Position numbers and translations under genes: made by a program. The notes beneath the pieces were generated by a model. The model did no database searches, was not told the origin of the DNA, and worked only from the letters and a program-made list of their open reading frames with translations. From Octopus sinensis (lineage: Eukaryota), in NCBI RefSeq assembly GCF_006345805.1, contig NC_043012.1, forward strand, positions 3,224,001-3,288,000: 64,000 nucleotides of DNA, written 5' to 3'. Of this stretch, positions 1,162 through 57,200 are shown piece by piece (positions within the stretch are counted from its first letter, which is position 1; each line of letters opens with the position of its first letter).

Positions 1162-2279
1162 TATACTTGAATAAATTGAAAATATATATCATCCTTGGGG
1201 GTTAACAGTGTTCATATCCATACAACCTATATGCACACATTCAATAAAGATAAAAAGCATAAATCTATATGCATAAACGCATATATAAATATATTGGGTC
1301 ATCCCATAAATAATGTGGTTTTTTATACATCCTTTACTTTACAAAATTAAAATAAACAAAGTCCATTTTTAATCTCCCTGGCCACATAGTTGGCATGACT
1401 TTTGTTCTATGTGTGGGGTTATAAATTTCACTATGTTCAATTATAATGAGTGTTGGGGATTTTGATTTTTAAGTTGCTAGATGTATTCAGCCAATGAAGT
1501 AGTGGGCCAATTTAGGCTTTGTGTATGAGGGGATGTGTGTGTAAATGTGCTTCTTAAAGTTGTTGGCTGTGGCTTCAACATATTCTCTTGTAGTTGAACT
1601 GGTAATCACTTGACATCTGTAAATGATGCTTTTAGCAAAGCAGTTTCTTTTCAAAGGGTACTCAAGTGTATTTTTATAATAACAAGTTTTAGATGTAGAG
1701 GCTCCTCAGGTTGGATATATCAGTGTCTGATATTTGTTCAGAGCAATTGTAGAAGTATGTGGGAGATATGAAACAGTGTTTGTAGTTAGAGCAGCCAGTT
1801 GGGTTTCATTGAAGGTCATTCTGCACGGAGAGAAGAGGAATTGGGAATGTATGATGCTGGAAATCAGGATCAGTAAAATTAAGAAGTTGACCATCAGATA
1901 TCAGAGGATGTACAACATTGTATTTTTTAGTGTAAAGTTATTATTCCCAGTCATGTTATCTGCAGGGTTGGGGTTGTAGAGTACAATAGCCTAACTATAT
2001 GGTTATTAGATACTTGGTAAATGTGTGTGTATGTGCATACATGTTATGCATTCACATGCGCACATGTGTGTTTATGTGTGTGTGTGTGTGTGTGTGCACG
2101 CATGCATGTAGAATGCTTTTATATAGATTTTTTTTTTAAATCACTAATTATATGGCTATTCAAATATATTTTAACCTTTACCAAGATAAGTTCATTGATT
2201 ATTATTCAGTTTATATTTAAATATATCAATATTGGATTTCTTTGTTTTCTTATATAGAAATTTTAATAATTTGACCTAC

Positions 2280-2417
2280 CTTTCTGGAATAAACTTATGT
2301 GGTTCTGGCCAGTATTCAGGGTCATGTTGAAGGCTATAAATAGATATGTCTATAGGAATGTCTTTCGGAATTATCCAGTCCTTTATCTTAACAGTTTCCT
2401 TGGCATACCTCTGAAGC
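2280..2417 (-). CDS. CYP left exon 12
   Basis: Identical to right (PER). Confidence 0.93.
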
Positions 2418-5400
2418 CTGTATAAATGAACAATAGGGAAAATTCTTAATTAATTGCAATATTTAATACCTAAGAATAATTCCATAAAATATACAGATAT
2501 ATATATTAAAGCGTCTAGCTGACACAATCATTAACAAAACAAGGAAAATGTTTTGTGTTGGGCAAAATGCTACATTCTGAGTTCAAATTCCTCCAGTCCA
2601 TATTTGCTTTTCACCCTCCCCGGATTCATTAAATAAATACTAGCTGAGCCTTGTGGGCCAATGTAATTGATTTACTGATCTCTGAAATTGCTGGTCTTGT
2701 ACCAAAATTTGAAATCAATGTACAGATATATTTACACATCAAAAGCAATAAAATATATTCCCATATTTTAGCAAACTCTTGAAAGTAAATGAAGTTAAAA
2801 TTATTGACTCAGTACTTAAACAGAGTTTTGATCACTATATATTTGAAGGTGATGGTCTGATATGGACACATCACAGCTGAATCACAGACACAATTCAGAT
2901 ATAATAAGAACACTGGAGAAACTCTTCTAGATTCTCACTTCATGTTTGTCTGAGACTGCCTCAATAATGTACAGACCATAATTGCAATAGAACACAATTA
3001 TAAGCACATCATTACTTCACTTTCGTTTGATAATGTAGCATTCTCTTTGAGACAGGAATATGAACTTATACATTTTATGCACAGGATGTTCTGTTATTAG
3101 GGCAATGACTGACTATTACATTTATGTTAATAGTAGGCATCTGTCGGTCTTGGGAGACCATGGATCTATGCCTGAAGAAATCATGTCAGCTGCTGATGGT
3201 GATGCAGCACGTGTTGTGGCTGTATAGGCCCACATGTGAGTGGTTGTATAGGCCCACATGAGAGTGGTAATCATGCATACAACGATTGCATTTAAAGAAG
3301 CTTTCTACAGGTGCTACTGGTTTTTCCTTTCATGAAGTGCACTTTTCTTTGGTTGCAAGTTCCTGTTTGTCTTCCACTTGCTTCACACACTTTTGCAATA
3401 TTTGTCTCCAGCATGGCGATCATTTGCAGTCTCCTCCCCTCTCAGAATGTCCAGAACCATCAACTTCATATCTTTCTTGCAGACGTACTTGAAACAAAGA
3501 TGAGGTTGTGCTCTTGTGCCAATGTCCAATTCTCCATACAGGATGTCCTTTGGGGCTCCCCCTGTCTGGCATGTGAAGTACATTTACATTATATCACAAC
3601 AACAAAGTAGATTTTTGCATGTAAACATATGATGTCATAATTTGTTGTAATGAAAGGTTATAAAATTTGGTACTAATATATATTTCTTATGGAACATATT
3701 TTTAAAAATCAATAAGCGGAAGTATTGATATAAATAGGGAGTTACAGAACAGGAGATATGCCATTGCTATTATTATGTATTTGGTAATATTATGTATTCC
3801 TTATGGAACATATTTTTCACACCAAGTGTAGAATATTGATATGAACATTGGTACTATCATACATTCCTTATGCTACTATTATGTTATTTGGTACTGTTAT
3901 GTGTTTCTTATCAAACACATTTTTGGTACTATTGTATATTTCTTGTGGAACACACTTTTCAAAACAATAAGGGAAGAATATTGATACAAATAGGGAGTTA
4001 CAGAATGGGAGATATGCCATTGAATATTGCAGCTTTCCTTTATAATTTTCTCCTCAAAATTGTTCGTTCACTTTTCAATTACTTGCTCTCTTCTCTTAAA
4101 AGAAGGCCATCAACAACAAGTAGTCTTATATCCCTTCTCTATAGTTTTCATTTGTATTTAAGTAGAATATATTCTATTAACAAACCATACAGTTGATACA
4201 ATTTAATGTGGAATATTCCTGATAGTAATAAATAAAATTCATAATGCATCACATTAGCTCACCTCTTTACAACAAACATTATTTAATTATTTCATGCACA
4301 TGTAAACATTGTAACACTACCTGAGTGATGCAGGATACATTCTAAGTAATTCAGACATACACATATCGAGGTAAGTTAGTGTGTTCAAATTTTCAACCGT
4401 AGGTTCTTCCTGCAAACAAATAAATATCAAATTCAATTCATGACACTGATTTGCTACTGAATCATAAATAAAATAAGTGAAATATAAGCATTTAACAAAA
4501 TACAGTTTAGGATTATGTTGATATTAGATTCACAATAGCTACTGTCATTTCCACACTTTTCTGAGTAATCACAATTGTCTTTGTTCATATTTTAATTTTG
4601 CAACCAAAATAATTATTCTATCTATATTAATATCCAAATAATATTAGTGAATATATATATATACACACACACACAAAGCAGTTATATCACAATCACCTCA
4701 GACATATGCAGCTGAGTAGCCTCTATAGTTAGAAATGTATCACTGGCTTAGATAGACTTCTAAAATAATTACTTTAGAAGTCTATCTAAACCAGTAATTA
4801 GTTATAATTAATGCTAAATTTCTCTAAACATTTGTATTCACTATGACTAGAACTTTTAAGTCACAGACAACCAAAATTTTAGAGTCTCATTAGTGATGAG
4901 CTAACCAATTGCAGATCTCTTGCATTATGTCTTAACACAAGTGCAATTCTACAATACAATACATATTACTTGAACTCAAAACTGTTTATCACATAATACA
5001 GCAGTACACATCACTACAACATCTCTGGTTTATGAATTATTCAGGTATTATTAGGTTACTGACTCGCCAGCACACCAGGTGAAATGCTCAGCAGCATTTT
5101 ATCCATCTTCATATTCTGAGTTCAAATTCCACTCAGGTGTTTTTTGCCTTTCATTCTTTCAGGGTTCATAAAATAAGTACCAGCCAAGTACTGGGGTTGA
5201 TGTAATCAACTTAGCCCCTCTCACCAAATTACTGGTCTTGTGCCAAAATCTTAGGGAAACTTACGTCACCAATGACATCCATCACTTCATCATATACCTT
5301 CTGCTGTATTTCTGGCTGAGTGGCAAGGATATATGAAAAAAACGACAACTCAGTTGAAGTTGCGAAGTGTGAAGCAAATAAGAACAACACCACCTGTGCA

Positions 5401-5586
5401 ACAATTTCTTCATCTGTTAAACCTATATTAATAAAAGATGATAAATTGAGCTTATGTTGCTATATAGTAAGATTGAAATATCCTGAACTAAGGATACATG
5501 TACATGTATACGACAGATAATGGATGTACATATGTATTTGTGTTCATTTTTGATTGAACCTAGTCATTTTACACATACATGATAAC

Positions 5587-5636
<50 letters not shown>

Positions 5637-5846
5637 CAAACACATGCTAAAAGAGATGTGAGGAAAAGTAAATAAATATAATTTATGCTATCTCTCTCTT
5701 TTTCTCACTCTCTGTCACACACATACATACAGCAACACACACACTTTCTCCCCCTCCTCTCTCTCAGTCAATCACACACTTGCTAAAAAAAGATGTGAGG
5801 AAAAATGAATTTAAAAAATGTTCAGTCACCCTGTCCCCTACATCTT

Positions 5847-5915
<69 letters not shown>

Positions 5916-8900
5916 CACTCACTTTAAATTTATTATTCAATTTTCAATAAGCTAAAATCTTAAATTATTAATTGACACATTATTAATTAGCATAATAGCA
6001 TAGCCTGGGAAAAAACATGGATTACATGGAAAAATGCAAGCAAGAGAAATAATATTCTTAAGATTATAAATCTGGAAAAGTTCAGGAAAAGTTATTACAC
6101 TTGGAAAAGTTCAGGACAAGTTATTACGTCTAGTAAAGTATAGAACAAGAAAATTTTTACTTAAAATATTGCAGCTAAGGATAAAATCTGAATATTAAAA
6201 ATTATTTGACTTTAATTTACGAACTAACATGATAATTAAAAAACATACCATCATTTTGTTAAAATAGTGACACATTAGATTACTTAAAAAATGAGAGCCA
6301 GAAGTACCAATATTGCTATAGTTTTATGCAAAGTAGAATAGTATATAAGGTAGGTAAATTCATTATGTAAAAAATAGGTATTGGGTCAAGACTGAAAATG
6401 TGAAGTCTTGGCAATAACTCGAGCAAATTTTACTGTAAATTTGTTGTTATACGTAGATTTTACAGTAATATATAATTAATTTTTGCATTATTTTATTTAT
6501 TGAACTAACTAATTATATATTTTTCATAACCTATTTTCAAATTTCTAATTATTAATCAATAATTAAAAAATTGAATTTTTTTGAAGGGTAAAAAGTATTT
6601 TGAGTTATATTTTATTTTTAATAGAAGTAACAAATGAAAGTAATAACTTGAAATACAATTTTTAGTTTTAATAAAAGCTAATATTTTCTAAATCTAAATA
6701 TCCTATTTGAAATTTTATCCTTAGCTGCAATATTTTAAGTAAAAATTTTCTTGTTCTGTTCTTTACGAGATGTAATAACCTGTCCTGAACTTTTCCAAGT
6801 GTAATAACTTTTCCTGAACTTTTCCAGGTTTATAATCTTAAGAATATTATTTCTCTTGCTCCCATTTCCCCATGTAATGAAACTACTGCTTCGTTAGATT
6901 TGTTTCTTCACACTGGCTTGCAACTCAATTTATGAACAGCTATGTTTTCTAAACAGTGTTTGGATGCTCTCTCTGTTGATTTGTTTTCTGATCTGGTTGA
7001 ACAAACAACTACTGTGTTGTGCTGGTTAGAGGACAGATATCATTATTATACCAATACTATCAGCCTTCCTTAGATAACTTAATTGCTTTTGCACATGTTC
7101 ACTCTTATCTGATAAGATTGCCTAAGAACCACTGTTTCTAATATCTACATCTTTCTCTTTCCCACGGACTTGTTTCATTTTTATCTGACATTCTGCTTTT
7201 GCATTTATATCTATAATTGTGTCTGGTGACTGCATTATGTATCTGCATGAGCTCTCCACTAGTTGGCATGAATGTTTCACTGTTCTCATTCTGCTCTCTG
7301 TCATGAGACGCAGAGAGCAGAATGAGAACAGTGTACCTGCTGTGGATCAAATAAAAGGTGAGGTCTGAAATTCCAATACAACAACCAAGTAGAACACAAG
7401 ATATCTGAAGAAGGCAGGAACATACAACAGCTGAAATGTAGTGAAAGCAACAATCAAGATGAGTACACCAGTTCAACTAATGTAAACAGTCAAATTTTAT
7501 ACTGTTTAAGACACCAAAGACCTTACAGGTTTTCATGGTACTGGTGATTAAGACATAATTTCAGACAACTGTTTGTCTGGGTCTTACGGAAGCAGTAAAA
7601 CCATAGCACAGAAAAGCACTACGCACCCTTGTGCATTGGTAAAGATTTTCACTGGCATATGTATTGCCATCAAGCATGCATCATGTGCTTTTTTTGGTGG
7701 TAGTTATAAATTACTATTGTACCTTCATGGTTCAATGATAGATTTCTTCCTAGTTAAGAGATTAGTTCGAGTGAGTGGTACTTATGTGCATACACATAAA
7801 AACGATCATGCACACACAGATATATATATATATATATCAATATACACACACAAATATATATAAATATATGTGTGTGTGTATATCATCATCATGATCATCA
7901 TCATGATTATCATCATTTAACGTCCGTTGTCCATGCTGGCATGGTTTGGACGTTTGACTGGGCTAACATGCTGGAAGGCTGCACCAGACTCAAGTCTGAT
8001 TTGGCATGGTTTTCTACAGCTAGATGCTCTTCCTAATGCCAACCACTCCGAGAGTGTATTTGGGTGCTTTTATGTACCACCAACATGGGCACCTAAAATA
8101 TGGTATCCACACCCAATATTGATTTTCCATCTTTGATCTCATTGTTGTTTACATGAGGCATGAGGGATATGAAATGTCAGAGCAAAATAAGTGCTGGCTG
8201 TATTTTCTACAGAAAATCTCTAGAGATAACCTTAACCTTAAGTGATGTAGTAGCACTGCTAACACAGTAGAACACAGGATTGACTTATCAAAATGTTTAA
8301 TATACTTTGTAGTATATTATGGTTGCATAATGAAATATGGTGTGCCCACAGATCATTACTATTCATATTTAGCTGATGAGACACAAAACTCTAATGTATT
8401 AGAATATTTATTTTATCAGATCTTAATAATGCCCAAATATTCTCACTGAGATCCATTATAGATTATTGCTCACATATCAAATATGGTGCTGGTACTACTA
8501 CACACACACATATATAGACATCCTAAACATTGTCCACAAAAAGGTCACCCAACTCACAAGCAGACTCCAGCCTCTGAAGCAAAGACATGCTGAGTTATAT
8601 TCCTCAGCTTTTCCTTTTGCTACTAAAATAATTCTTGCTTCTTTGAGCATCTCCTCTGAGCATTTCCGATTTACTCATTTCTTTTTCCCTCTTTCTCTGC
8701 CCAACCCCAATAGATCCAACACTAGTTATTGTGCCTTCAAAATCCCTTCCCTGATCATGTATTTTCTGCAGATGTTGATTTGCAAAAGTCATTTTCACTC
8801 TGTTCTATGTACACACTGACATTACCCTTCCAATGGAGCATACTGGCTTTACTTCCTTCAAGATTTGCATGTCCTTTGTAGTCATAGCCCATGTTTGACA

Positions 8901-11900
8901 GCCATGTAGCATAGCTGTACATACACAGGCATCATACAATCTGCCTTTCACTTTGAGGGAGAAGTGCTTTGTTACCAACAAATGTAGTAGCTCTTAGAAC
9001 TTTACCCGGCCTATTCTTACTCTAGCAACTATGCTTTTAGAGCTTCCTCCATCACTGCTAACTTGGTCTCAAAGGTAACAGAAGCTATCTACTACTTCTA
9101 AGGATTCCTGGGCATTGCAGGAAGTCTGTTCTCTGCACATTCTCAGTGTTTATTGTACCCACACATTTGCTACACACAAATCTATTTTCTCTGTTAAACT
9201 TCCCATGACACCACTACACCTTCAATGTGTTCAAAGCTTGCACTAAGTAGTTTCTACTAACACATTTCTTACATATTGAGCAGGGCTGTCTCCTTGAAGG
9301 GATTTGTGATTCATCTGTTTTCCCACTTAATAAGGCTTTGGTCTTTTCTCAGTGAATTTCTGCAGAATACTGCATCTAAAGCGTTCATATATATTTTGTA
9401 TATCAAACCTATATTTCAAATAATCAAAATTTACTTGCCTCTTTTTGACCTCCAGTCACTCATGTTCTCAAATGTGAGTGTTTCCAGTTCGTGTTTCATA
9501 TCATCATCAATTTTATCAACATTTTCAAGTTTTGCATCCAACAAAAGTTGGAGAAAATCATGTCTTACCTAAAACCAACAAGAAAATCTAGAAATATTAA
9601 ACAGCTGAATAAAATTACTGAGGTTTTAATATAAATATTAGGCATTCTAAGTACTAATTTTAGAAATATCCAATCACTGGATTTTACTGGTAGATTTTTT
9701 TGGACAAGTGGAACATTACTATGAATGAGATGTATATTGTGATATGGCAAAATTGCGTTTTGGTATTCTATAGACATATGATGAACAGAGCAGTAACATA
9801 GAAAACTCCTTTTCAATTTCTTGTAAATTCAGTTAAATAGAAACTGTAATAAGGAAATGCAGAACATATATTTCATATTTTTCAGTAGACAGTATATAAT
9901 TCTAATTCTCACTGTCTAATCTCATTTCCTCACTAGAAAAAAATGTTTTTCTTGCTGGTTATAAAAAACATTTTAAAACACATTGACTGAAAACATACTA
10001 TGAAATGCTCAATAACATTAAATAAATTTCAAATATTACCGTTTTATTTTTTCTCCGTTCTGCTATAACATCTTTGGAAAACATAGAGATAGAGTGCAAT
10101 GAACTGGAAAAGTTAGTGTTGATTCCGAAAGTACCCAGAATTTTTGGAATTACTGGAAATAACACTGAAACAACAAATGCACAGGCTAATTAGTACAGTT
10201 GATTATATTGGCGATAAAAATTTGTATTCCATGTAATAAACCAATAAACCTTAGCAGTTTTCTTGAAACGAATGATATACATGTTAATAAATAAACTCAC
10301 TGATCAAAACTAGAAACTTATTGAGAGTTCCTTTGTTTTTAGTGAAATCAACAATCAAAACAGATCCAAATGTTCTCAACAAGCTTACGTTCTATTTCAG
10401 ATGAAACTGTTTTTGCCTGTTTTGTGTTGATTTTGTAGAGGTAAATATTGTAAATGCAATGAAAGATAGGCTAGGTGCCTTGCTATCTCTAGATTTGTTC
10501 AATAGAAAGTGGAATTTTCTGGAGAGAAAACAAAAGGCTTCAATTTAAGACTTTCTAGAGAGTTTCAAAAGGTTAGTGTTGTATAATTCATGTACCTGAA
10601 GAGTGAAGTGCAATGATTTATTTATATATAAAGCCGAAAAAGGAGCTTAATTTCAGATTATTTTGTGACCAAAATAAAGGGATATTGTGATATTATCTGT
10701 GTTATTAGGCATCATTGATCAGAGCAGAACACCTGAGCACAGGAGTGCTCATTCCAACCTGTTATCTGCCCATATAGACAGGTGCACCAACATATAGCAT
10801 AGATAAATTAACAACAACTAGCTGAAGCATCGTTCAGTGAGAGATAAACATAACTGCAATGATGTCTGAGTTTGGCTTTTCTTTCTTTTCTGTATATTTA
10901 TCATAAATACAGTCTTTTATCTAATGTATAGAGGTTAAAATTTACACACACACGCGTACAGAAACTCATTTAAACATACATCGATACAAGCACACACATG
11001 ATGTGTGTCACTGCAATACACACAGTTAGCAACAATGAGGTCATATTCATTCAATAACATATCTTAAGAGAATAAGTAAATATTTACTTTGAACAGAAGT
11101 GATCGGGTCATAAAAATTGACATAAAAGAATTTGTCAAAGCATTTTATTAATGCATGATCTGGATTCTTCTGTGAATTAACTTCGATGCCAAACGCAGTA
11201 GATGCAATCATATCAACTGTGTAATGTGAAAATACTCTGAAATGAAAATAAAGAAATAAGAAACTAAAATAATACTAAAACTCACTTTGTTCTGCTCTTT
11301 TAAATACATTTTAATTGGGAACTATTGTTGTGCATTGAGTACATTTTAAAACAAAAGCTATGCTACTAGTATGTGACGTGATGGTATAGATTCAATTTAC
11401 AGGTTAAATTATTTCACATATCTTACATTGATAATAATTATTGGAAATGTATCAATTCCAGTTTTTCTCTCCAAATACAAAGCTATCATGCATAGTGAGA
11501 AAGACATGATTTCTTTTTTCCTGCTTATTATAAAATTAACAAATTGCTTGTAATTTTTCACTTCAATGGGTCAAATACCTACACTGGTGCTTTTTGGCAT
11601 AGACAGTACAATCCTTACTCTGCCTCAGAATGCTGAACCTTTCAGAAAGAGATGACAAAGGACCAAGATACCTGGCACCTTGCTGTACTCAAGAAGACCT
11701 ATCCTCCACAGCAGAAGTGTTATGGTAGCATTCGCTGGTGAAGGGGATTGGCCTGCAAAAGTCCTGTGCGGTTGCCATATAAAAGCAATTGTGTTGGTGC
11801 CATGCTAAAAGCACCCTACACACATTGTAAAGTGTTTGGCATTAGGAAGAGTATCCAGCTGTAAAAACCAAGCAAAATCAGACTGGAACCTGGTGCAGCT

Positions 11901-20900: not shown

Positions 20901-21535
20901 TGTGCCAGTAGAGTGACACTGGCAATGATCACACTCGAATGGTGCTTTTCATGTATCACTGACATAGGAGCAAATTCATGGCCCTGGCAACGATCATGCT
21001 CAGATGCACTTTTAACATTCCACTGACACGAGTGCCAAGCAGTCAGTACTGTCATAAACACAGATAGCGTAGACTCTTGAGTGCCACGATATGTCCTTAC
21101 TAATAGCGTTAGAGACCTAATGGAGAGAAATTTATTTTATCTTGGAATGAAATTTGCCCGTAAACTCCGTATTCTGTCGTGCATTGCAGTAAGAGGTGGA
21201 CAAAAGTGTGTAGAAAGTGAACTCATAGAATTAACTCTTAGAACATTTTAATAAATTAGCTTTTAAATTAGCTTATAAGTATAAACAATTAATTGATATT
21301 TAAAAATGGTCATAGTGAGTATAGAAACTTTAGTCGTAATGAGAATACAAATGCTTTAGTAATAACGTTAGTATAAATATTTTAGTAATTTAGTTGGTAA
21401 AAGATTTTACAATTCGAAGTTTGTGTAATTTTTTTCTGAATAAAAAGTTGATAAATTTACTTACATATATAATAGCAGAAGAACAATTGAGAGGAGAACA
21501 CAATTCGGTATAGTAAAGAAGCTGAGGGTATCCAT
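2280..21535 (-). CDS. CYP3A-like: Cytochrome P450, clan 3 (CYP3A-like), left copy; exons 1-12 open; exons 13-14 not in window
   Basis: Exons (minus): 21535-21465, 19130-19034, 16139-16087, 14926-14830, 13211-13095, 12210-12122, 11236-11088, 10164-10040, 9568-9439, 5422-5265, 4409-4321, 2417-2280. Frame is open throughout and splice sites mirror the right copy. Confidence 0.92.
3135..3600 (-). mobile_element. RTE-like LINE 3' fragment (mirror at ~53545-54010)
   Basis: PKDILYGEL...CKKDMK C-terminal RT-adjacent motif. Confidence 0.65.
4321..4409 (-). CDS. CYP left exon 11
   Basis: Identical to right (ELLR). Confidence 0.92.
5265..5422 (-). CDS. CYP left exon 10 (I helix, FLFASHFATSTEL)
   Basis: 158 nt, open frame through ATQPEIQQKVYDEV. 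Confidence 0.92.
5588..5910. repeat. (CT)n microsatellites with a duplicated ~45-bp unit
   Basis: Direct reading. Confidence 0.85.
6021..6878. mobile_element. Foldback/MITE-like element with ~170-bp imperfect TIRs (left arm only)
   Basis: 6021-6190 is the inverted complement of ~6712-6878; short internal repeats tggaaaagttcagga. Confidence 0.7.
8650..9260 (-). mobile_element. LINE RT fragment (mirror at ~49550-50180)
   Basis: Degenerate FCYLGDQVS...KVKGRLYDACV...LHG reading. Confidence 0.7.
9439..9568 (-). CDS. CYP left exon 9
   Basis: Identical to right, same GC donor. Confidence 0.87.
10040..10164 (-). CDS. CYP left exon 8
   Basis: 9 nt / 7 aa differences from right. Confidence 0.88.
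11088..11236 (-). CDS. CYP left exon 7
   Basis: 3 nt / 2 aa differences from right. Confidence 0.92.
12122..12210 (-). CDS. CYP left exon 6
   Basis: 2 nonsynonymous differences from right. Confidence 0.88.
13095..13211 (-). CDS. CYP left exon 5 (DVLPQNKISDRFISFLKDNHWKFTRTVLLPTFSTSHLKQ)
   Basis: Same length and splice sites as right; 12 aa differences. Confidence 0.92.
14830..14926 (-). CDS. CYP left exon 4
   Basis: Identical to right exon 4. Confidence 0.92.
16087..16139 (-). CDS. CYP left exon 3
   Basis: Identical to right exon 3. Confidence 0.9.
16942..17713 (-). mobile_element. Non-autonomous Helitron, intron 2 (left copy)
   Basis: 5' TC(TC)TATATATAAAA, (ctgt)n, 3' hairpin then CTTG|T. 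Confidence 0.7.
19034..19130 (-). CDS. CYP left exon 2
   Basis: Identical to right exon 2. Confidence 0.92.
21465..21535 (-). CDS. CYP left exon 1
   Basis: Identical to right exon 1. Confidence 0.9.
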
Positions 21536-22798: not shown

Positions 22799-22845
<47 letters not shown>

Positions 22846-24699: not shown

Positions 24700-25200
24700 A
24701 AAACAAAAATGTGCGCAAACCAGCGAGGGTGGGGACAGGACTTTTGGAAAATTCACAAGATCCGAGTTTTTTTCCCCAAAACTTTTAGGGTTAGTAAAAA
24801 CATTTTGTTTGTGATCCTTCAAAATTAACAGAGGTTGCTTAGGATCAAGTGGTTCTGTCTTCATTTGTAGGTTATATTTCTCCATGATTTTCATAGCCTC
24901 AATGTTGGCTTTCTTAAGTATTCTTTTATCAGCAATTTTATACTTTTTCTGAATTTCTTTTTTAAGTAATTCCAAATAATAGTCTTTATCAAGTTTGTAC
25001 AGATTTCCAGTCTTATCCAACATAGTATCCATAGAATTGATTTCTTTGGTGATGTTGCGAAGATACCCCAGATGTTTATTTCTTAGTGGTGATCGTTGAA
25101 AATTTACATTTCTCACAATGGACCAGAGATCATCTTCAAATTGCTTCAATCTTGGGTAATTTAGATAACCTGAATGAAATATTCTTAATTAAGTTCTTAG
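24700..25200 (-). mobile_element. Penelope-like element fragment (pre-RT region)
   Basis: FEDDL...DKTGNLYK...LKDHKQN resembles the region preceding Penelope RT. Confidence 0.65.

Positions 25201-25698: not shown

Positions 25699-25699
<1 letters not shown>

Positions 25700-25781
<82 letters not shown>
25700..25781. repeat. (TA)n microsatellite
   Basis: Direct reading; also 22798-22843 and 51168-51212. Confidence 0.95.
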
Positions 25782-25785
<4 letters not shown>

Positions 25786-33522: not shown

Positions 33523-33561
<39 letters not shown>

Positions 33562-48500: not shown

Positions 48501-51164
48501 TAAGTTTCTAGTTTTGATCAGTGAGTTTATTTATTAACATGTATATCATTCGTTTCAAGAAAATTGCTAAGGTTTATTGGTTTATTACATGGAATACAAA
48601 TTTTTATCGCCAATATAATCAACAGTACTAATTAGACTGAGCATTTGTTGTTTCAGCATTATTTCCAGTAATTCCAAAAATTCTGGGTACATTCGGAATC
48701 AAAAGTAACTTTTCCAGTTCATTGCAGTCTCTCGCTAAGTTTTCCAAAGATGTTATAGCAGAACGGAGAAAAAATAAAACGGTAATATTTGAAATTTATT
48801 TAATGTTATTGAGCATTTCATAGTATGTTTTCAGTCAATGTGTTTTAAAATGTTTTTTATAACCAGCAAGAAAAACATTTTTTCTAGTGAGGAAATGAGA
48901 TTAGACAGTGAGAATTAGAATTATATACTGTCTACTGAAAAATATGAAATATATGTTCTGCATTTCCTTATTACAGTTTCTATTTAACTGAATTTACAAG
49001 AAATTGAAAAGGAGTTTTCTATGTTACTGCTCTGTTCATCATATGTCTATATGATACCAAAATGCAATTTTGCTATATCACGATATACATCTCATTCATA
49101 TTAATGTTCCACTTGTCCAAAAAAATCTACCAGTAAAATCCAGTGATTGGATATTTCTAAAATTAGTACTTAGAATGCCTAATATTTATATTAAAACCTC
49201 AGTAATTTTATTCAGCTGTTTAATATTTCTAGATTTTCTTGTTGGTTTTAGGTAAGACATGATTTTCTCCAACTTTTGTTGGATGCAAAACTTGAAAATG
49301 TTGATAAAATTGATGATGATATGAAACACGAACTGGAAACACTCACATTTGAGAACATGAGTGACTGGAGGTCAAAAAGAGGCAAGTAAATTTTGATTAT
49401 TTGAAATATAGGTTTGATATACAAAATATATATGAACACTTTAGATGCAGTATTCTGCAGAAATTCACTGAGAAAAGACCAAAGCCTTATTAAGTGGGAA
49501 AACAGATGAATCACAAATCCCTTCAAGGAGACAGCCCTGCTCAATATGTAAGAAATGTGTTAGTAGAAACTACTTAGTGCAAGCTTTGAACACATTGAAG
49601 GTGTAGTGGTGTCATGGGAAGTTTAACAGAGAAAATAGACTTTGCGTGTAGCAAATGTGTGGGTACAATAAACACTAAGAATGTGCAGAGAACAGACTTC
49701 CTGCAATGCCCAGGAATCCTTAGAAGTAGTAGATAGCTTCTGTTACCTTTGAGACCAAGTTAGCAGTGATGGAGGAAGCTCTAAAAGCATAGTTGCTAGA
49801 GTAAGAATAGGCCGGGTAAAGTTCTAAGAGCTACTACATTTGTTGGTAACAAAGCACTTCTCCCTCAAAGTGAAAGGCAGATTGTATGATGCCTGTGTAT
49901 GTACAGCTATGCTACATGGCTGTCAAACATGGGCTATGACTACAAAGGACATGCAAATCTTGAAGGAAGTAAAGCCAGTATGCTCCATTGGAAGGGTAAT
50001 GTCAGTGTGTACATAGAACAGAGTGAAAATGACTTTTGCAAATCAACATCTGCAGAAAATACATGAGCAGGGAAGGGATTTTAAAGGCACAATAACTAGT
50101 GTTGGATCTATTGGGGTTGGGCAGAGAAAGAGGGAAAAAGAAATGAGTAAATCGGAAATGCTCAGAGGAGATGGTATGAGCCTAACTTGCTCAAAGAAGC
50201 AAGAATCATTTTAGTAGCAAAAGGAAAAGCTGAGGAATATAACTCAGCATGTCTTTGCTTCAGAGGCTGGAGTCTGCTTGTGAGTTGGGTGACTTTTTTG
50301 TGGACAATGTTTAGGATGTCTATATATGTGTGTGTGTAGTAGTACCAGCACCATATTTGATATGTGAGCAATATATAATGGATCTCAGTGAGAATATTTG
50401 GGCATTATTAAGATCTGATAAAATAAATATTCTAATACATTAGAGTTTTGTGTCTCATCAGCTAAATATGAATAGTAATGATCTGTGGGCACACCATATT
50501 TCATTATGCAACCATAATATACTACAAAGTATATTAAACATTTTGATAAGTCAATACTGTGTTCTACTGTGTTAGCAGTGCTACGACATCACTTAAGGTT
50601 AAGGTCATGTCTTGAGATTTTCTGTAGAAAATACAGCCAGCACTTATTTTGCTATGACATTTCATATCCCTCATGCCTCATGTAAACAACAATGAGATCA
50701 AAGATGGAAAATCAGTAATGGGCGTGGATGACATATTCCAGGCATTTTTTCTCCTTAATCAGCACCCATCCAACCCATTAATCATCTACAAACACATTGC
50801 TTAACCCTTTTGTTATTATATTCCTGTTGAGATACTCTGTGTTTCTTTCAATTTATTTAAAATATAACGAAGTATTTAGTAAAATAACTTAGTTATCATT
50901 AAACTATAGTTAGGAACATAAATTGTGACTAAGGTTTGGTGGAAGACTTTTATTCAGAACATTTGAAAACAAGACATTTGTACTACAGATCCATAGGCAG
51001 TTTCAGCTGGGTTGGTATCAAAAGGGTTAAATATGTATGTATATATATGTATATATATATATATTATTTATTTATTTAAATGAATGCAATGCATCCATTC
51101 CCAAGTATGATTGTATATATATATATATATTTACACACACATATTTATAACTGTGAGTATAATG

Positions 51165-51223
<59 letters not shown>

Positions 51224-54200
51224 TATCTGTGTGTGCATGATTGTTTTATACATATGCACATAAGTACCACTCACTCAAACCGATCTGTTGACCAGGAAGA
51301 AATCTATCATTGAATCATGAAAGAACAATAGTAATTTATAACTACCATCAAAAAGAGCATATGATGCATTCTTGATGGCAATGCATACGCCAGTGAAGAT
51401 CTTTACCAATGCACAAGAGTGCATAGTGCTTTTACTGCTTCTGTAAAACTGTATTTTTTAAAGATGTTTTGGTGTCTACTACATATGACTGCATTGTTGT
51501 AATCAAAACGTGTGTGTGTTGCTTAACTGTTCCGTTTGTAATTATTCCTACTGGCTTTATAAACACCCAAAAATTATATCTGCCCACTTCCATTACTATA
51601 TATTTATTGCCAGCTGCAAGTTCTATGTGTCTCTACCAAAAAGAATCTCTGAATCCTTAGTTCAGGATATTTCAATCTTACTATATAGCAACATAAGCAC
51701 AATTTATCATCTTTTATTCATGCAGGTTTAACAGATGAAGAAATTGTTGCACAGGTGGTGTTGTTCTTATTTGCTGCAGACTTAACAACTTCAACTGCGT
51801 TGTCGTTTTTTTCATATATCCTTGCACTCAGCCAGAAATACAGCAGAAGGTATATGATGAAGTGATGGATGTCATTGGTGACGTAAGTTTCCCTAAGATT
51901 TTGGCACGAGACCAGTAATTTGGTGGGAGGGGCTAAGTTGATTACATCAACCCCAGTACTTGGCTGGTACTTATTTTATCAACCTTGAAAGAATGAAAGG
52001 CAAAAAACACCTGAGTGGAATTTGAACTCAGAATATGAAGATGGATAAAATGCTGCTGAGCATTTCACCTGGTGTGCTGGCGAGTCAGTAACCTAATAAT
52101 ACCTGAATAATTCATAAACCAGAGATGTTGTAGTGATGTGTACTGCTGTATTATGTGATAAACAGTTTTGAGTTCAAGTAATATGTATTGTATTGTAGAA
52201 TTGCACTTGGGTTAAGACACAATGCAAGAGATCTGCAATTGGTTAGCTCATCACTAGTGAGACTCCAAAACTTTGGTTGTCTGTGACTTAAAACTTCCAG
52301 TCATAGTGAATACAAATGATTAGAGAAATTTAGCATTAATTATAACTAATTACTGGTTTAGATAGACTTCTAAAGTAATTATTTTAGAAGTCTATCTAAG
52401 CCAGTGATACATTTCTAACTATAGAGGCTACTCAGCTGCATATGTCTGAGGTGATTGTGATATAACTGCTTTGTGTGTGTGTGTATATATATATATTCAC
52501 TAATATTATTTGGATATTAATATAGATAGAATAATTATTTTGATTGCAAAATTAAAATATGAACAAAGACAATTGTGATTACTCAGAAAAGTGTGGAAAT
52601 GACAGTAGCTATTGTGAATCTAATATCAACATAATCCTAAACTGTATTTTGTTAAATGCTTATATTTCACTTATTTTATTTATGATTCAATAGCAAATCA
52701 GTGTCATGAATTGAATTTGATATTTATTTGTTTGCAGGAAGAACCTACGGTTGAAAATTTGAACACACTAACTTACCTCGATATGTGTATGTCTGAATTA
52801 CTTAGAATGTATCCTGCATCACTCAGGTAGTGTTACAATGTTTACATCTGCATGAAATAATTAAATAATGTTTGTTGTAAAGAGGTGAGCTAATGTGATG
52901 CATTATGAATTTTATTTATTACTATCAGGAATATTCCACATTAAATTGTATCAACTGTATGGTTTGTTAATAGAATATATTCTACTTAAATACAAATGAA
53001 AACTATAGAGAAGGGATATAAGACTACTTGTTGTTGATGGCCTTCTTTTAAGAGAAGAGAGCAAGTAATTGAAAAGTGAACGAACAATTTTGAGGAGAAA
53101 ATTATAAAGGAAAGCTGCAATATTCAATGGCATATCTCCCATTCTGTAACTCCCTATTTGTATCAATATTCTTCCCTTATTGTTTTGAAAAGTGTGTTCC
53201 ACAAGAAATATACAATAGTACCAAAATGTGTTTGATAAGAAACACATAACAGTACCAAATAACATAATAGTAGCATAAGGAATGTATGATAGTACCAATG
53301 TTCATATCAATATTCTACACTTGGTGTGAAAAATATGTTCCATAAGGAATACATAATATTACCAAATATATAATATAGCAATGGCATATCTCCTGTTCTG
53401 TAACTCCCTATTTATATCAATACTTCCGCTTATTGATTTTTAAAAATATGTTCCATAAGAAATATATATTAGTACTAAATTTTATAACCTTTCATTACAA
53501 CAAATTATGACATCATATGTTTACATGCACAAAATCTACTTTGTTGTTGTGGTATAATGTAAATGTACATCACATGCCAGACAGGGGGAGCCCCAAAGGA
53601 CATCCTGTATGGAGAATTGGACATTGGCACAAGAGCACAACCTCATCTTTGTTTCAAGTACGTCTGCAAGAAAGATATGAAGTTGATGGTTCTGGACATT
53701 CTGAGATGGGAGGAGACTGAAAATGATCACCATGCTGGAGACAAATATTGCAAAAGTGTGTGAAGCAAGTGGAAGAGAAACAGGAACTTGCAACCAAAGA
53801 AAAGTGCACTTCATGAAAGGAAAAACCAGTAGCACCTGTAGAAAGCTTCTTTAAATGCAGTTGTTGTATGCATGATTACCACTCTCATGTGGGCCTATAC
53901 AACCACTCACATGTGGGCCTATACAGCCACAACACGTGCTGCATCACCATCAGCAGCTGACATGATTTCTTCAGGCATAGATCCATGGTCTCCCAAGACC
54001 GACAGATGCCTACTACTAACATAAATGTAATAGTCAGTGATTGCCCTAATAACAGAACATCCTGTGCATAAAATGTATAAGTTCATATTCCTGTCTCAAA
54101 GAGAATGCTACATTATCAAACGAAAGTGAAGTAATGATGTGCTTATAATTGTGTTCTATTGCAATTATGGTCTGTACATTATTGAGGCAGTCTCAGACAA

Positions 54201-57200
54201 ACATGAAGTGAGAATCTAGAAGAGTTTCTCCAGTGTTCTTATTATATCTGAATTGTGTCTGTGATTCAGCTGTGATGTGTCCATATCAGACCATCACCTT
54301 CAAATATATAGTGATCAAACTCTGTTTAAGTACTGAGTCAATAATTTTAACTTCATTTACTTTCAAAAGTTTGCTAAAATATGGGAATATATTTTTTGCT
54401 TTTGATGTGTAAATATATCTGTACATTGATTTCAAATTTTGGTACAAGACCAGCAATTTCAGAGATCAGTAAATCAATTACATTGGCCCAGAAGGCTCAG
54501 CTAGTATTTATTTAATGAATCCGGGGAGGGTGAAAAGCAAATATGGACTGGAGGAATTTGAACTCAGAATGTAGCATTTTGCCCAACACAAAACATTTTC
54601 CCTGTTTTGTTAATGATTGTGTCAGCTAGATGCTGTAATATATATATCTGTATATTTTATGGAATTATTCTTAGGTATTAAATATTGCAATTAATTAAGA
54701 ATTTTCCCTATTGTTCATTTATACAGGCTTCAGAGGTATGCCAAGGAAACTGTTAAGATAAAGGACTGGATAATTCCGAAAGACATTCCTATAGACATAT
54801 CTATTTATAGCCTTCAACATGACCCTGAATACTGGCCAGAACCACATAAGTTTATTCCAGAAAGGTAGGTCAAATTATTAAAATTTCTATATAAGAAACA
54901 AAGAAATCCAATATTGATTATTTAAATATAACTGAATAATAATCAATGAACTTATCTTGGTAAAGGTTAAAATATATTTGAATAGCCATATAATTAGTGA
55001 TTTAAAAAAAAAATCTATATAAAAGCATTCTACATGCATGCGTGCACACACACACACACACACAAACATAAACAACATGTGCGCATGTGAATGCATAACA
55101 TGCATGCACATACACACACATTTACCAAGTATCTAATAACCATATAGTTAGGCTATTGTACTCTACAACCCCAACCCTGCAGATAACATGACTGGGAATA
55201 ATACTTTACACTAAAACACTAAAAATGTTGTACATCCATGATATCTGATGGTCAACTTCTTACTCTTTGATTGATCCTGAATTTTACTGATCCTGATTTC
55301 CAGCATCATACATTCCCAATTCCTCTTCTCTCCGTGCAGAATGACCTTCAATGAAACCCAACTGGCTGCTCTAACTACAAACACTGTTTCATATCTCCCA
55401 CATACTTCTACAATTGCTCTGAACAAATATCAGACACTGATATATCCAACCTGAGGAGCCCTACATCTAAATAAACTTGTTATTATAAAAATACACTTGA
55501 GTACCCTTTGAAAAGAAAACTGCTTTGCTAAAAGCATCATTTACAGATGTCAAGTGATTACCAGTTCAACTACAAAGAATATGTTGAAGCCACAGCCAAC
55601 AACTTTAAGAAGCACATTTACACACACATCCCCTCATACACAAAGCCTAAATTGGCCCACTACTTCATTGGCTGAATACATCTGGCAACTTAAAAATCAA
55701 AATCCCCAACACTCATTATAATTGAACATAGTGAAATTTACAACCCCACACATAGAACAAAAGTCATGCCAACTATGTGGCCAGGGAGATTAAAAATGGT
55801 CCATATACACACAGTAACTGATAAATGGGACACACGCAAACGTAAACAATATTCACACATAAACACACATAATGCATGAGCACACACTTTATGCACAAAC
55901 ACACATTCATGCCTTTAAACACACACACACACACACACCTAAAAGCAAACACATGCACCTCACACATGCCTACTCCATCAATCCGTATACTCACACCTAC
56001 CTTTGCACATACATACACACACATCTGATAACCTCATGCACCCATACATTAGAAGTAGTCCCTTAATTTCTCGGTATAGCTTGGAGGACCAGGATAAACA
56101 GGGAGGTTAAGAATTCATCCTTTCTTTTGCAACTTTCATTTTCTCACCTGGGCCAGAAATTTGATGCCTCTGTAATTATTTCTGTCTAGGACATCACCTT
56201 TGTCTTTGTAGCAGTTGACTATAATATTGCTTCTCTGATCATTGGGCATGACTCCCACTTGGACAACCTGATTAACTATACTGGTGACCAAGTCATATCT
56301 CACTCTGCCAGATATTTTAAGCATCTCAGCAGTGATTCCTGATGGGCTGAAGGCTTTTCCTGTCTCCATATCCTTAATTGCCTTATCTACTAAGCTTCTG
56401 TCAACCAGATAGCTGGCTCCTCTGTTCTGTTCACATTAAGCAGGCTCTCCTTCTCCCATGCATTTTCTACATTTAGCAACCTTTCATAGTGGCACTTCCA
56501 AGCCTCCTTCTTTGCAAAATCACTGACTACAAGTGAGCCATCATCTATGAGAAAAAATTGCTCTGCTACCACAGCACGATCTTCTCTGACAATGTTTAGC
56601 AATCCAAAATACTTCAAGCTTCTGGTCTTCACATCGCAGGCCATTGACAGCTTTCTCCTTGCTTTCTCCTTTCTCCCTGGCCAAGCATACCTGCCTTCTA
56701 ACCTCCCTCATAGCTACCTGGTATAGTTCTTTGCTACAATACAAAATACACATAGATGAATAACGATATATTATGCACCTTACAAGGTAAATTCTCGTTC
56801 TAAAATTGTATGTGTTTTATATTACTTTTAATGTATCAAAAAACTGTCATGATTTATGAATCATTTGGTATTTTCTAATAACGGTACTCTAATCTTCAGA
56901 TTTGCACCTGAAGCAAAAGACAAATTGAATCCTTATACCTTCTTACCATTCGGCATTGGACCAAGAATGTGTATAGGCATAAAAATGGCAAGATTGGAAT
57001 TTAAGCTTGCTATCGCTACCATAATCAGAAAATATAAATTTGTGAAATCTCCGAAAACCGAGGTAAGATAATGTGAATATGAAATCTTAAAATATAAAAC
57101 AGAGTTTGTGTGTGTGTGTGTGTGCATGGACATATGTTCCTTATGGATTTGAAAACCTAGTTGCCGATTTTGGCGTATTAGGTATCAAATGATTCAGTAA

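What the first reader, a model, noticed from the sequence alone, without database searches (positions are those of the whole stretch)
1364..55799. Palindromic head-to-head P450 pair, homogenised except at the substrate pocket
Seen (manual alignment): two clan-3 P450 copies lie in inverted arms. Exons 1-4, 9, 11 and 12 show 0 differences in 675 nt, and most introns look ~97-99% identical. Exons 5, 6, 7, 8 and 10 show 38 substitutions, 28 amino-acid changes and only 3 synonymous codons. Some non-coding patches (intron 9, spacer-proximal ends) are only ~85-90% identical, so the duplication is older than the bulk identity suggests. Established: Gotoh SRS1 (B'/C), SRS2/3 (F-G) and SRS4 (I helix) set P450 specificity, and theory on duplicates under gene conversion predicts divergence peaks at selected sites. 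Inference: arm-to-arm conversion homogenises the scaffold while selection keeps two different active sites, giving a two-specificity P450 palindrome.
Basis: partly seen in the sequence, partly recalled or inferred. Interest (0 to 1): 0.92.

Follow-up and report, generated by a model that had tools for sequence, protein, structure and literature searches.

The report
Octopus inverted P450 gene pair
Two inverted copies of an Octopus sinensis cytochrome P450 gene are an old duplication kept about 98% alike by copying between them, and their protein differences cluster at the active site; this is a known kind of gene-pair evolution, and one copy has a broken reading frame in this assembly.

Summary

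The window is Octopus sinensis chromosome CM016874.1. The gene has 14 exons, not 12. The arms run to about 125 nt past the stop codon: copy B ends at 59280, and copy A ends 7.6 kb left of the window.

Comparison with O. vulgaris and O. bimaculoides shows an old inverted duplication. Unconverted blocks are 11-12% diverged, against 1.5% between sinensis and vulgaris. Arm-to-arm gene conversion then homogenised the arms in a mosaic (runs test p=3e-9).

Selection is suggestive, not proven. 25 of 30 amino-acid differences fall in substrate-recognition segments. Nonsynonymous divergence is about twice the local intron rate (p=7e-5). But dN/dS is only 1.3-1.7 (not significant), and 25 of 28 divergence islands are non-coding.

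The O. vulgaris orthologue of B has a stop at codon 12. "Two working specificities" is therefore unproven.

The closest known case is the head-to-head CYP1A1/CYP1A2 pair, so this is a new member of a known kind.

The parts
1363..23949 (-). Arm A (the part inside the window), carrying copy A exons 1-12. The arm continues left of the window for another ~7.6 kb.
   Evidence: blastn arm-to-arm blocks. L001 is the same chromosome and extends 17.5 kb to the left.
23950..29623 (.). Spacer between the arms (~5.7 kb). It is 98.3% identical to the O. vulgaris sequence upstream of the B orthologue.
   Evidence: the ORFs here have no Pfam hit
29624..59280 (+). Arm B, carrying all 14 exons of copy B. It ends ~125 nt after the stop codon.
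21465..21535 (-). Copy A exon 1 (ATG at 21535)
   Evidence: Spliced model translates exactly to XP_036365728.1 / P0121
19034..19130 (-). Copy A exon 2
16087..16139 (-). Copy A exon 3
14830..14926 (-). Copy A exon 4
13095..13211 (-). Copy A exon 5 (SRS1, B-B'-C region). It has 19 differences from copy B, all within a 67-nt stretch.
12122..12210 (-). Copy A exon 6 (2 differences)
11088..11236 (-). Copy A exon 7 (3 differences)
10040..10164 (-). Copy A exon 8 (F'-G'-G region, SRS2/3). 9 differences, 8 of them derived on the A lineage.
9439..9568 (-). Copy A exon 9 (0 differences). Its donor is GC in all four genes compared.
5265..5422 (-). Copy A exon 10 (I helix, SRS4), reading frame intact. The motif is ASHFAT.
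4321..4409 (-). Copy A exon 11
2280..2417 (-). Copy A exon 12 (ends in PERF). Exons 13-14 are off the window.
30709..30779 (+). Copy B exon 1
38164..38260 (+). Copy B exon 2
41081..41133 (+). Copy B exon 3
42283..42379 (+). Copy B exon 4
44010..44126 (+). Copy B exon 5. The divergence island is 44013-44079.
45010..45098 (+). Copy B exon 6
45984..46132 (+). Copy B exon 7
48657..48781 (+). Copy B exon 8
49252..49381 (+). Copy B exon 9
51726..51882 (+). Copy B exon 10: 157 nt against 158 nt in copy A, O. vulgaris and O. bimaculoides. One C is missing at 51825 (CC to C). The conserved frame then hits TGA at 51863-51865.
52738..52826 (+). Copy B exon 11
54727..54864 (+). Copy B exon 12
56900..57062 (+).
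59084..59158 (+). Copy B exon 14 plus the stop codon
29624..30003 (+). Old, unconverted inner end of arm B, paired with A 22180-23949. A-B divergence is 9.2% against B-vulgaris 1.1%.
36240..36540 (+). Old block in intron 1, next to the A-specific deletion. A-B divergence is 14%, B-vulgaris 1.3%.
51159..51433 (+). Old block in intron 9, paired with A 7622-7887. A-B divergence is 13-14%, B-vulgaris 2.2%.
46605..48192 (+). 1.6-kb repeat insertion in intron 7 of copy B. O. vulgaris shares it; copy A and O. bimaculoides lack it. The flanking alignment blocks overlap by ~12 nt, which would fit a target-site duplication (not verified).
31192..36239 (+). ~5 kb of intron 1 present in copy B, O. vulgaris and (in pieces) O. 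bimaculoides, but deleted from copy A.
159..839 (-). Mariner-type transposase fragment inside a ~5.4-kb A-specific insertion between exons 12 and 13 of copy A. This insertion is why arm homology appears to stop at 1363.

Best explanation
This is a genuine, old inverted duplication of one 14-exon clan-3 cytochrome P450 gene in the Octopus sinensis / O. vulgaris lineage. Copy A is XP_036365728.1 and copy B is XP_029646589.1.

The duplicated unit runs from ~1.1 kb upstream of the ATG to ~125 nt past the stop. The two copies lie head to head around a 5.7-kb spacer. O. bimaculoides has the single-copy ancestral arrangement.

The copies split soon after the bimaculoides lineage separated. Since then, repeated intrachromosomal arm-to-arm gene conversion has overwritten most of both arms. 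This has left a mosaic of three kinds of sequence:
- Tracts homogenised after the sinensis/vulgaris split (exons 1-4 and 11-12).
- A central 8.4-kb tract last homogenised before that split (exons 5-10).
- Small old blocks that escaped conversion, many of them next to large indels or transposon insertions that interrupt homology.

On top of this mosaic, amino-acid replacements have accumulated faster than the local neutral rate. They sit almost only in the segments that line the active site:
- SRS1 in exon 5, changed on both lineages.
- The G'-G region in exon 8, changed on the A lineage.
- The I-helix oxygen-activation motif in exon 10, changed on the A lineage.

I infer selection for a changed pocket, mainly in copy A, plus the resistance of already diverged patches to further conversion.

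Shown: the structure, its age, the conversion mosaic and the SRS concentration. Inferred: that selection caused the SRS divergence. Not established: that both copies are functional today.
For: Structure:
- Arms and spacer are defined.
- Both copies have 14 exons with conserved splice sites.

The rearrangement is real:
- The O. bimaculoides upstream flank (L003 6560-8671) lies beyond copy A's 3' end. The bimaculoides downstream flank follows copy B.
- The independent O. vulgaris assembly has the same spacer at 98.3%. It also has the innermost piece of arm A in inverted orientation (L002 1131-1347).

Age:
- Old blocks give dAB 10.8-12.1%, dBV 1.5%, dAO 14.4% and dBO 13.0%.
- A 1.6-kb insertion is shared by copy B and vulgaris only. 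A 5-kb deletion is private to copy A.

Conversion:
- Shared-derived sites are BV 81, AB 49 and AV 14. They form 31 runs against 62 expected, p=3e-9.
- In converted tracts dAB (0.4-0.8%) is below dBV (1.4-3%).

Constraint and selection:
- Constant exons have 0/675 differences against 52/4198 in flanking introns, p=8e-4.
- In the central zone, exons have 4.95% differences against 2.55% in introns, p=4.6e-4.
- There are 32.75 nonsynonymous differences against 15.5 expected, p=7e-5. Synonymous differences match expectation: 5.25 against 4.1.
- The N:S ratio is 35:7 on the paralogue lineages against 67:34 on the orthologue lineage, p=0.044.
- 25 of 30 amino-acid differences fall in SRS-equivalent segments, p=6e-12. 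The orthologue control is 14 of 57, Fisher p=2e-7.
- The exon 8 and exon 10 changes are almost all derived on the A lineage. Exon 5 has 10 A-derived and 8 B-stem-derived changes.
Against: - dN/dS is not significantly above 1: 1.68 in the variable exons and 1.33 overall, binomial p=0.70 against neutrality.
- Exon 5 could be an old unconverted patch under relaxed constraint. Its 16% divergence is not far above the 9-14% of old non-coding blocks.
- 25 of 28 dense divergence islands are non-coding, so islands arise without selection on protein.
- Exons 5, 8 and 10 each lie ~35-460 nt from an indel or heterology boundary.
- Copy B has a frameshift in exon 10. The RefSeq model avoids it only with a non-canonical intron.
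- The vulgaris B orthologue has TGT>TGA at codon 12 and an N:S ratio of 20:3. This fits decay of B better than maintained dual function.
- Copy A replaces the near-invariant I-helix Thr, which is T in 105 of 109 homologues. That could mean loss of function rather than change of function.
- I could not retrieve arm A of O. vulgaris beyond its inner ~1.3 kb.
- The SRS boundaries are my own generous definitions, projected from CYP3A4.
Confidence: 0.66

Rival explanations
1. Conversion mosaic without adaptive divergence. The islands, including those in exons 5, 8 and 10, are simply patches that conversion tracts missed, because nearby indels and prior divergence block heteroduplex formation. One or both copies are under relaxed constraint and B is decaying. 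The SRS concentration arises because SRSs are the least constrained parts of any P450.
For: - 25 of 28 islands are non-coding, and many abut the indel/TE breakpoints of the arm alignment.
- dN/dS is indistinguishable from 1.
- Copy B has a frameshift in sinensis. Its vulgaris orthologue has a nonsense codon and N:S 20:3.
- The differing sites are more variable among 109 homologues (entropy 2.16 against 1.83, p=0.02).
Against: - Nonsynonymous divergence in exons 5-10 is 2-3.4 times the intron rate of the same tract (p=7e-5 to 3e-9). Synonymous divergence equals the intron rate. Relaxation alone cannot push dN above neutral.
- Orthologous differences show no SRS enrichment (14 of 57).
- The exon 8 and 10 changes are one-sided on the A lineage, unlike old blocks where both lineages contribute.
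- The constant exons are cleaner than their introns (p=8e-4). So both copies were constrained until recently.
- Four I-helix changes hit positions that are near-invariant elsewhere, not variable ones.
Confidence: 0.24
2. Assembly artefact. Two haplotypes of one locus were joined head to head, so the differences are allelic.
For: - The O. sinensis assembly may derive from error-prone long reads (from memory, not checked here), and octopus genomes may be heterozygous (also not checked).
- Bulk arm divergence (~1-2.5%) is in a range that alleles could show.
- I had no read data.
Against: - The two arms have different unique flanks, matching the upstream and downstream flanks of the single O. bimaculoides gene.
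- The independent O. vulgaris assembly has the same spacer and the inverted inner arm end.
- Copy B shares 81 derived sites and a 1.6-kb insertion with the O. vulgaris gene that copy A lacks. The A/B split therefore predates speciation.
- RefSeq annotates two separate full-length genes.
Confidence: 0.04
3. A young duplication, about as old as the sinensis/vulgaris split, with a burst of positive selection and no gene conversion.
For: Bulk arm divergence (~1.3-2.2%) is about equal to the sinensis-vulgaris divergence (1.7%).
Against: - Old blocks are at 11-14% divergence.
- There are 81 B+vulgaris shared-derived sites, segregated in tracts from 49 A+B shared-derived sites.
- The B-lineage insertion shared with vulgaris is absent from copy A.
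- The inverted inner arm end is present in O. vulgaris.
Confidence: 0.02

Closest known systems
Vertebrate CYP1A1/CYP1A2 head-to-head pair with region-specific gene conversion (PMC3199271)
   Same: - Two paralogous P450 genes lie in inverted, head-to-head orientation, separated by a spacer (23 kb in human).
- The duplication is older than the species compared.
- Conversion is detected as exon-by-exon switches between a tree that groups paralogues and a tree that groups orthologues. This is the same logic as my site-pattern test.
- One paralogue decays in some lineages (macaque CYP1A2 null alleles).
   Different: - In CYP1A, conversion is limited to parts of exons and ceased long ago, and the paralogues are ~80% identical. 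Here whole 30-kb arms, introns included, are ~98% identical, and conversion continued after the latest speciation.
- In CYP1A, the converted regions include SRS1 and SRS5. Here the SRS segments are what stay different.
- The clan differs (clan 3, not CYP1), and so does the phylum.
Large palindromes with arm-to-arm gene conversion, as on primate Y chromosomes (Rozen et al. 2003; from my own knowledge, not read here)
   Same: - Inverted arms of tens of kb lie around a unique spacer.
- Arm-arm identity is higher than orthologous identity, because of ongoing intrachromosomal conversion.
- The structure is conserved between sister species.
   Different: - Y palindromes are up to megabases long, with >99.9% arm identity, and carry testis gene families.
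- Here the arms are 30 kb, the pair appears to be autosomal (not checked), the arms are 97.8% identical with many old islands and arm-specific transposon insertions, and each arm holds a single gene.
Paralogous differences maintained by selection under gene conversion (Innan 2003; Teshima & Innan 2004; Takuno & Innan 2009, cited in PMC3199271; other examples from my own knowledge: primate red/green opsins, RHD/RHCE)
   Same: Most of the duplicated unit is homogenised, with sharp divergence peaks at functionally decisive codons.
   Different: - Selection is not demonstrated here: dN/dS is not significant and there are no population data.
- Many peaks are non-coding.
- One copy has an open-reading-frame lesion in each of two species.

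Membership tests
Cytochrome P450 (Pfam PF00067) | Significant match to the P450 profile over the full length | tested here: met
   P0121 (copy A) matches PF00067 at E=5.4e-96, residues 39-507. The precomputed PF00067 hit is also listed for P0001.
Cytochrome P450 (Pfam PF00067) | Haem-binding FxxGxRxCxG, the ExxR motif and the PERF motif | tested here: met
   FGIGPRMCIG is in exon 13 of both copies, ELLR in exon 11 and PERF at the exon 12/13 junction. In copy B these lie downstream of the frameshift.
Cytochrome P450 (Pfam PF00067) | I-helix oxygen-activation motif (A/G)-G-x-(E/D)-T-(T/S) | tested here: not met
   In 109 clan-3 homologues, G is present in 109/109, the acid in 107/109 and T in 105/109. 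The octopus genes read AAHLTT (bimaculoides, vulgaris), AADLTT (copy B) and ASHFAT (copy A). This motif is typical of monooxygenase P450s, but it does not define the fold.
CYP clan 3 (CYP3/CYP5-like) | Closest characterised relatives are CYP3A/CYP5A | tested here: met
   The best solved structures are CYP3A4, 3A7 and 3A5 (E 1e-97 to 1e-90), with the next family at 1e-40. Database neighbours are named CYP3A-like or thromboxane-A synthase. No formal clan phylogeny was made.
Palindrome evolving by arm-to-arm gene conversion | Inverted arms around a spacer, verified as a real chromosomal structure | tested here: met
   The flanks match the O. bimaculoides upstream and downstream flanks. The spacer and inner arm end are present in the independent O. 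vulgaris assembly. Read-level confirmation was not possible.
Palindrome evolving by arm-to-arm gene conversion | Paralogues within a species group together in some tracts and orthologues group in others, although the duplication predates the speciation | tested here: met
   AB-shared-derived sites 49, BV-shared-derived 81, AV 14. Runs test p=3e-9.
Palindrome evolving by arm-to-arm gene conversion | Both arms present in the sister species | tested here: inconclusive
   Only the spacer and ~1.3 kb of the inner end of arm A could be fetched for O. vulgaris. The locus stops 222 nt short of the high-identity part of arm A. No A-type protein is annotated in O. vulgaris.
Duplicates kept different by selection despite gene conversion | Divergence peaks coincide with functionally decisive sites | tested here: met
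   25 of 30 amino-acid differences are in SRS-equivalent segments (p=6e-12), against 14 of 57 in the orthologue control. However, 25 of 28 nucleotide islands are non-coding.
Duplicates kept different by selection despite gene conversion | Excess of replacement change (dN/dS>1, or dN above the neutral rate) | tested here: inconclusive
   dN/dS is 1.68 or 1.33, not significant. dN exceeds the local intron rate (p=7e-5). N:S is higher than on the orthologue lineage (p=0.044). No codon-model likelihood test and no polymorphism data.
Duplicates kept different by selection despite gene conversion | Both copies encode functional proteins | tested here: not met
   Copy A is intact. Copy B has a 1-nt deletion in exon 10 that leads to a premature stop, and the RefSeq model needs a non-canonical intron. 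The vulgaris B orthologue has a stop at codon 12. An assembly error cannot be excluded for the deletion.

The most novel reading that the evidence does not exclude
Both copies are expressed and functional, which requires the copy B deletion to be an assembly error or a rare allele. Selection has held two different active sites apart against continuing arm-to-arm conversion since before the O. sinensis / O. vulgaris split. This octopus P450 lineage has also lost the invariant Gly and acidic residue of the I-helix motif, and copy A has lost the Thr as well. It may therefore have moved away from ordinary O2-activating monooxygenase chemistry, with copy A a further neofunctionalised form.
Probability: 0.25. 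Interest if true: 0.65.

Novelty: new member of a known kind. Interest (0 to 1): 0.42.

Why it matters
- It is a clean invertebrate example of concerted evolution in a gene-sized palindrome. Three things can be separated using just two outgroup genomes: the age of the duplication, the timing of individual conversion tracts, and the sites that resist homogenisation.
- If both copies work, it would be a natural experiment on how few pocket residues redefine a clan-3 P450.
- The aberrant I-helix motif flags an octopus P450 lineage whose chemistry may be unusual.
- It also corrects the public annotation. The RefSeq protein for copy B is an artefactual read-around of a frameshift. The O. vulgaris model replaces the true first exon, which carries a stop codon.

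Tried and rejected
- **Heme motif search.** This showed that the gene has two more exons. It did not mean that copy A is truncated; that was resolved with L001.
- **Exon-targeted islands.** I tested whether the islands are preferentially exonic. They are not: 3 of 28 islands against 7% of sites.
- **Classical dN/dS.** It was under-powered (6.75 synonymous differences), so I used the intron rate of the same conversion tract as the neutral yardstick.
- **A third paralogue as conversion donor for the A-type residues.** The next closest octopus P450 clusters are only ~45% identical in protein. That is too distant for DNA conversion, so I rejected this without a genome-wide search.
- **Arm A in O. 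vulgaris.** The P0122 locus stops 222 nt short of the high-identity part of the arm. P0123 is an isoform with no separate locus on record. Going through the upstream TPR gene would also fall ~0.6 kb short by my estimate, so I ran no further search on it.
- **Literature.** I found no paper on this octopus locus.
- **Structure prediction.** Not run. The alignment to CYP3A4 sufficed to place the residues, and the tool returns no coordinates for distance measurements.


Full report
**1. What is there**

The window contains a large imperfect palindrome. There are 23 inverted-repeat pairs. Collinear blastn blocks of 97.5-97.9% identity link 1363-22184 with 30058-55799, and weaker patches (83-88%) carry the arms inward to 23949 and 29624.

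tblastn with the best database homologue showed that the annotated Octopus sinensis protein XP_029646589.1 (P0001) matches the plus-strand copy exon for exon. So the window is O. sinensis chromosome CM016874.1.

The gene has 14 coding exons.

The minus-strand copy A is XP_036365728.1 (P0121, 516 aa). I fetched its locus (L001, the same chromosome, reaching 17.5 kb left of the window). A fully canonical 14-exon model translates exactly to that protein.

Arm homology only seems to stop at 1363/55799. Copy A carries a ~5.4-kb insertion there, which includes the mariner fragment at window 159-839. Homology resumes beyond it and ends ~125 nt after the stop codon, at 59280 in arm B. Each arm is therefore about 30 kb, holds exactly one gene, and flanks a 5.7-kb spacer.

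**2.

All splice sites are conserved in both copies. The exon-by-exon differences are exactly as reported:
- 0 differences in 675 nt of exons 1-4, 9, 11 and 12.
- 19+2+3+9+5 = 38 substitutions in exons 5-8 and 10, giving 28 changed residues and 3 synonymous codons.
- Exons 13-14 add 4 substitutions.

The conserved frame then reads 12 wrong codons and stops at 51863-51865. The RefSeq protein for copy B reaches exon 11 only through an intron that is non-canonical in every possible placement (AG..GC, GT..CA or TG..AG). That model is an annotation work-around and is not evidence of function.

**3. A real rearrangement, not a mis-join**

O. bimaculoides (L003) has one copy, with a TPR-repeat gene 4 kb upstream and no inverted copy within 10 kb.
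- Its upstream flank (L003 6560-8671) is found in O. sinensis beyond the 3' end of copy A.
- Its downstream flank follows copy B.
- Both arms begin at the position equivalent to L003 ~8900.

The independent O. vulgaris assembly (L002) is collinear with window 22588-30981 at 98.3%. That stretch covers the whole spacer and the innermost, inverted piece of arm A (L002 1131-1347). The fetched locus ends 222 nt before the high-identity part of arm A, so I could not see a full vulgaris copy A.

**4. The duplication is old and the arms are a conversion mosaic**

I projected copy A, the O. vulgaris B orthologue (V) and O. bimaculoides (O) onto copy B coordinates.

Structural markers:
- A 1.6-kb repeat insertion (46605-48192) is shared by B and V but absent from A and O.
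- About 5 kb of intron 1 (31192-36239) is present in B, V and O but deleted in A.

Site patterns, polarised with O over 12,735 four-way sites:

| Pattern | Sites |
|---|---|
| B and V share the derived state | 81 |
| A and B share the derived state | 49 |
| A and V share the derived state (homoplasy control) | 14 |

The first two classes are spatially segregated: 31 runs against 62 expected, p=3e-9.
- A+B tracts cover 30117-42265 (exons 1-4) and 52498-56199 (exons 11-12).
- A B+V tract covers 43823-52266 (exons 5-10).

In three blocks that escaped homogenisation, A-B divergence is 11-12%. By comparison, B-V is 1.5%, and A or B against bimaculoides is 13-14%. The duplication is therefore roughly 80-100% as old as the split from O. 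bimaculoides, yet most of the arms look younger than the sinensis/vulgaris split.

**5. Is the coding divergence special?**

Evidence against a special status:
- Overall exon and non-exon divergence are similar (2.7% against 2.2%).
- Of 28 dense islands (at least 5 differences with gaps of 20 nt or less), 25 are non-coding.
- Many of these abut the breakpoints of the arm alignment, at 31191, 36240, 46604, 50742 and 51159-51650. Conversion is expected to fail there.
- The split into constant and variable exons largely follows tract history (section 4).
- dN/dS (Nei-Gojobori) is 1.68 in the variable exons and 1.33 overall, not different from 1.

Evidence for a special status:
- Within the central tract, exons have 38/767 differences against 142/5565 in introns (p=4.6e-4).
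- Nonsynonymous differences number 32.75 against 15.5 expected from the intron rate (p=7e-5). If indel-adjacent blocks are excluded, the expectation is 9.6 (p=3e-9).
- Synonymous differences match the intron expectation, 5.25 against 4.1.
- The constant exons are cleaner than their own flanking introns (0/675 against 52/4198, p=8e-4). Both copies were therefore constrained until recently.

Parsimony on ((A,(B,V)),O) gives these N:S ratios:

| Lineage | N:S |
|---|---|
| A | 19.5:5.5 |
| B stem | 12.3:0.7 |
| B (sinensis only) | 3.5:0.5 |
| Bimaculoides/stem | 66.7:34.3 |

The paralogue lineages against the orthologue lineage give Fisher p=0.044.

The exon 5 differences all fall within 67 nt (44013-44079). 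The flanks are identical for 31 nt upstream and more than 70 nt downstream. The changes split into 10 A-derived and 8 B-stem-derived. The exon 8 and exon 10 changes are almost all A-derived. They therefore look like a burst on the A lineage rather than retained old divergence.

**6. Where the replacements sit**

I aligned copy A to CYP3A4 (E=2e-97). This places:
- The exon 5 changes at CYP3A4 residues 108-124, the B-B'-C region or SRS1. This includes the position of Phe108 of the Phe cluster described in bioRxiv 10.1101/2020.06.09.142851.
- The exon 8 changes at residues 224, 239 and 246-250 (F'-G'-G).
- The exon 10 changes at residues 306-309 and 313 (I helix).
- Residue 498 at CYP3A4 residue 478 (SRS6).

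I used generous SRS windows of my own definition, covering 23% of the protein. 25 of 30 differences fall inside them (p=6e-12). Of the 57 differences from O. bimaculoides at sites where A equals B, only 14 do (Fisher p=2e-7).

**7. Function and caveats**

Copy A is a full-length P450 by Pfam. Its haem-binding motif, ExxR and PERF are all present.

The I-helix motif is aberrant in this whole octopus lineage. 109 clan-3 homologues have A-G-[YF]-[ED]-T-[TS]. The octopus genes read:
- AAHLTT in bimaculoides and vulgaris.
- AADLTT in copy B.
- ASHFAT in copy A.

Copy A has therefore also lost the near-invariant Thr. This could signal changed chemistry or loss of function.

Copy B is frameshifted in this assembly. 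Its O. vulgaris orthologue has TGT>TGA at codon 12 of the true exon 1, and the deposited model substitutes another first exon. Its lineage has N:S 20:3.

The sinensis deletion lies in a stretch otherwise identical between the arms. Short-read polishing is unreliable in such a stretch, so an assembly error is possible. I cannot decide this without reads.

**8. Verdict**

Gene conversion and the great age of the duplication are demonstrated. Concentration of replacements in pocket segments is demonstrated. Selection is likely (about 0.6-0.7) but not proven. "Two working specificities" is doubtful at present.

The closest precedent is the head-to-head CYP1A1/CYP1A2 pair with region-specific conversion (PMC3199271). 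Y-type palindromes and the Innan/Teshima model of selected differences under conversion are also close. I rate it a new member of a known kind, of moderate interest.

Noticed in passing
window 51825-51882 and 52736-52738 (copy B exon 10/11 junction): The RefSeq protein XP_029646589.1 (509 aa) is obtained only by ending exon 10 21 nt early and using a non-canonical intron (AG..GC, GT..CA or TG..AG). It contains 12 out-of-frame residues (LSQKYSRRYMMK) and lacks VMDVIGD. This is an annotation work-around for the 1-nt deletion.
   Followed up: yes
L002 8100-8170 (O. vulgaris OX597828.1; equivalent to window 30709-30779): The canonical exon 1 of the O. vulgaris orthologue of copy B has TGT>TGA at codon 12. 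The deposited models CAI9733869/70 start instead from an alternative exon in intron 1 (MNNFELRGGGGGGGVR), which lacks the membrane anchor. Whether A-to-I RNA editing (UGA to UGG), common in coleoids, could rescue it was not tested.
   Followed up: partly
copy A exon 10, window 5350-5372; copy B 51776-51798: The I-helix oxygen-activation motif is non-canonical in this whole octopus P450 lineage: AAHLTT, AADLTT or ASHFAT, against AG[YF][ED]T[TS] in 109 clan-3 homologues. This hints at atypical catalysis or eroding function.
   Followed up: partly
window 159-839 (-) and 61364-61918 (-): Mariner-type transposase fragments (Pfam Transposase_1, E=3e-23 and 9e-11). The first lies in the A-specific insertion that hides the continuation of the arm.
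   Followed up: yes
window 26325-26893, 8151-8709 and 50112-50683: A ~570-nt dispersed repeat is present in the spacer and in intron 9 of both arms (93-95% identical). The O. vulgaris spacer also has it (L002 3730-4298).
   Followed up: no
window 27666-28328 (-): A 220-aa ORF in the GC-rich part of the spacer contains a Y..Q..G.AMG-like stretch that recalls reverse transcriptases (my impression from memory). It has no Pfam hit at E<=0.001.
   Followed up: partly
window 9437-9438 and 49382-49383 (exon 9 donor): Intron 9 uses a GC donor in both O. sinensis copies, in O. vulgaris and in O. bimaculoides. It is a conserved GC-AG intron.
   Followed up: yes
window 55800-59280 (distal arm, exons 13-14): The distal 3.5 kb of the arms is less homogenised than the rest: 3.9% substitutions and 93-97% block identity. 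Conversion seems to weaken toward the outer ends as well as the inner ends.
   Followed up: partly
L002 8788-10079 and 10349-11648: O. vulgaris intron 1 carries a 1.3-kb inverted repeat (98%, foldback-like insertion) that is absent from O. sinensis copy B.
   Followed up: no
window 43948-43978: A 31-nt segment just upstream of exon 5 is deleted in copy A but present in B, O. vulgaris and O. bimaculoides. It lies 31 nt from the acceptor and may help isolate the exon 5 island from conversion.
   Followed up: no
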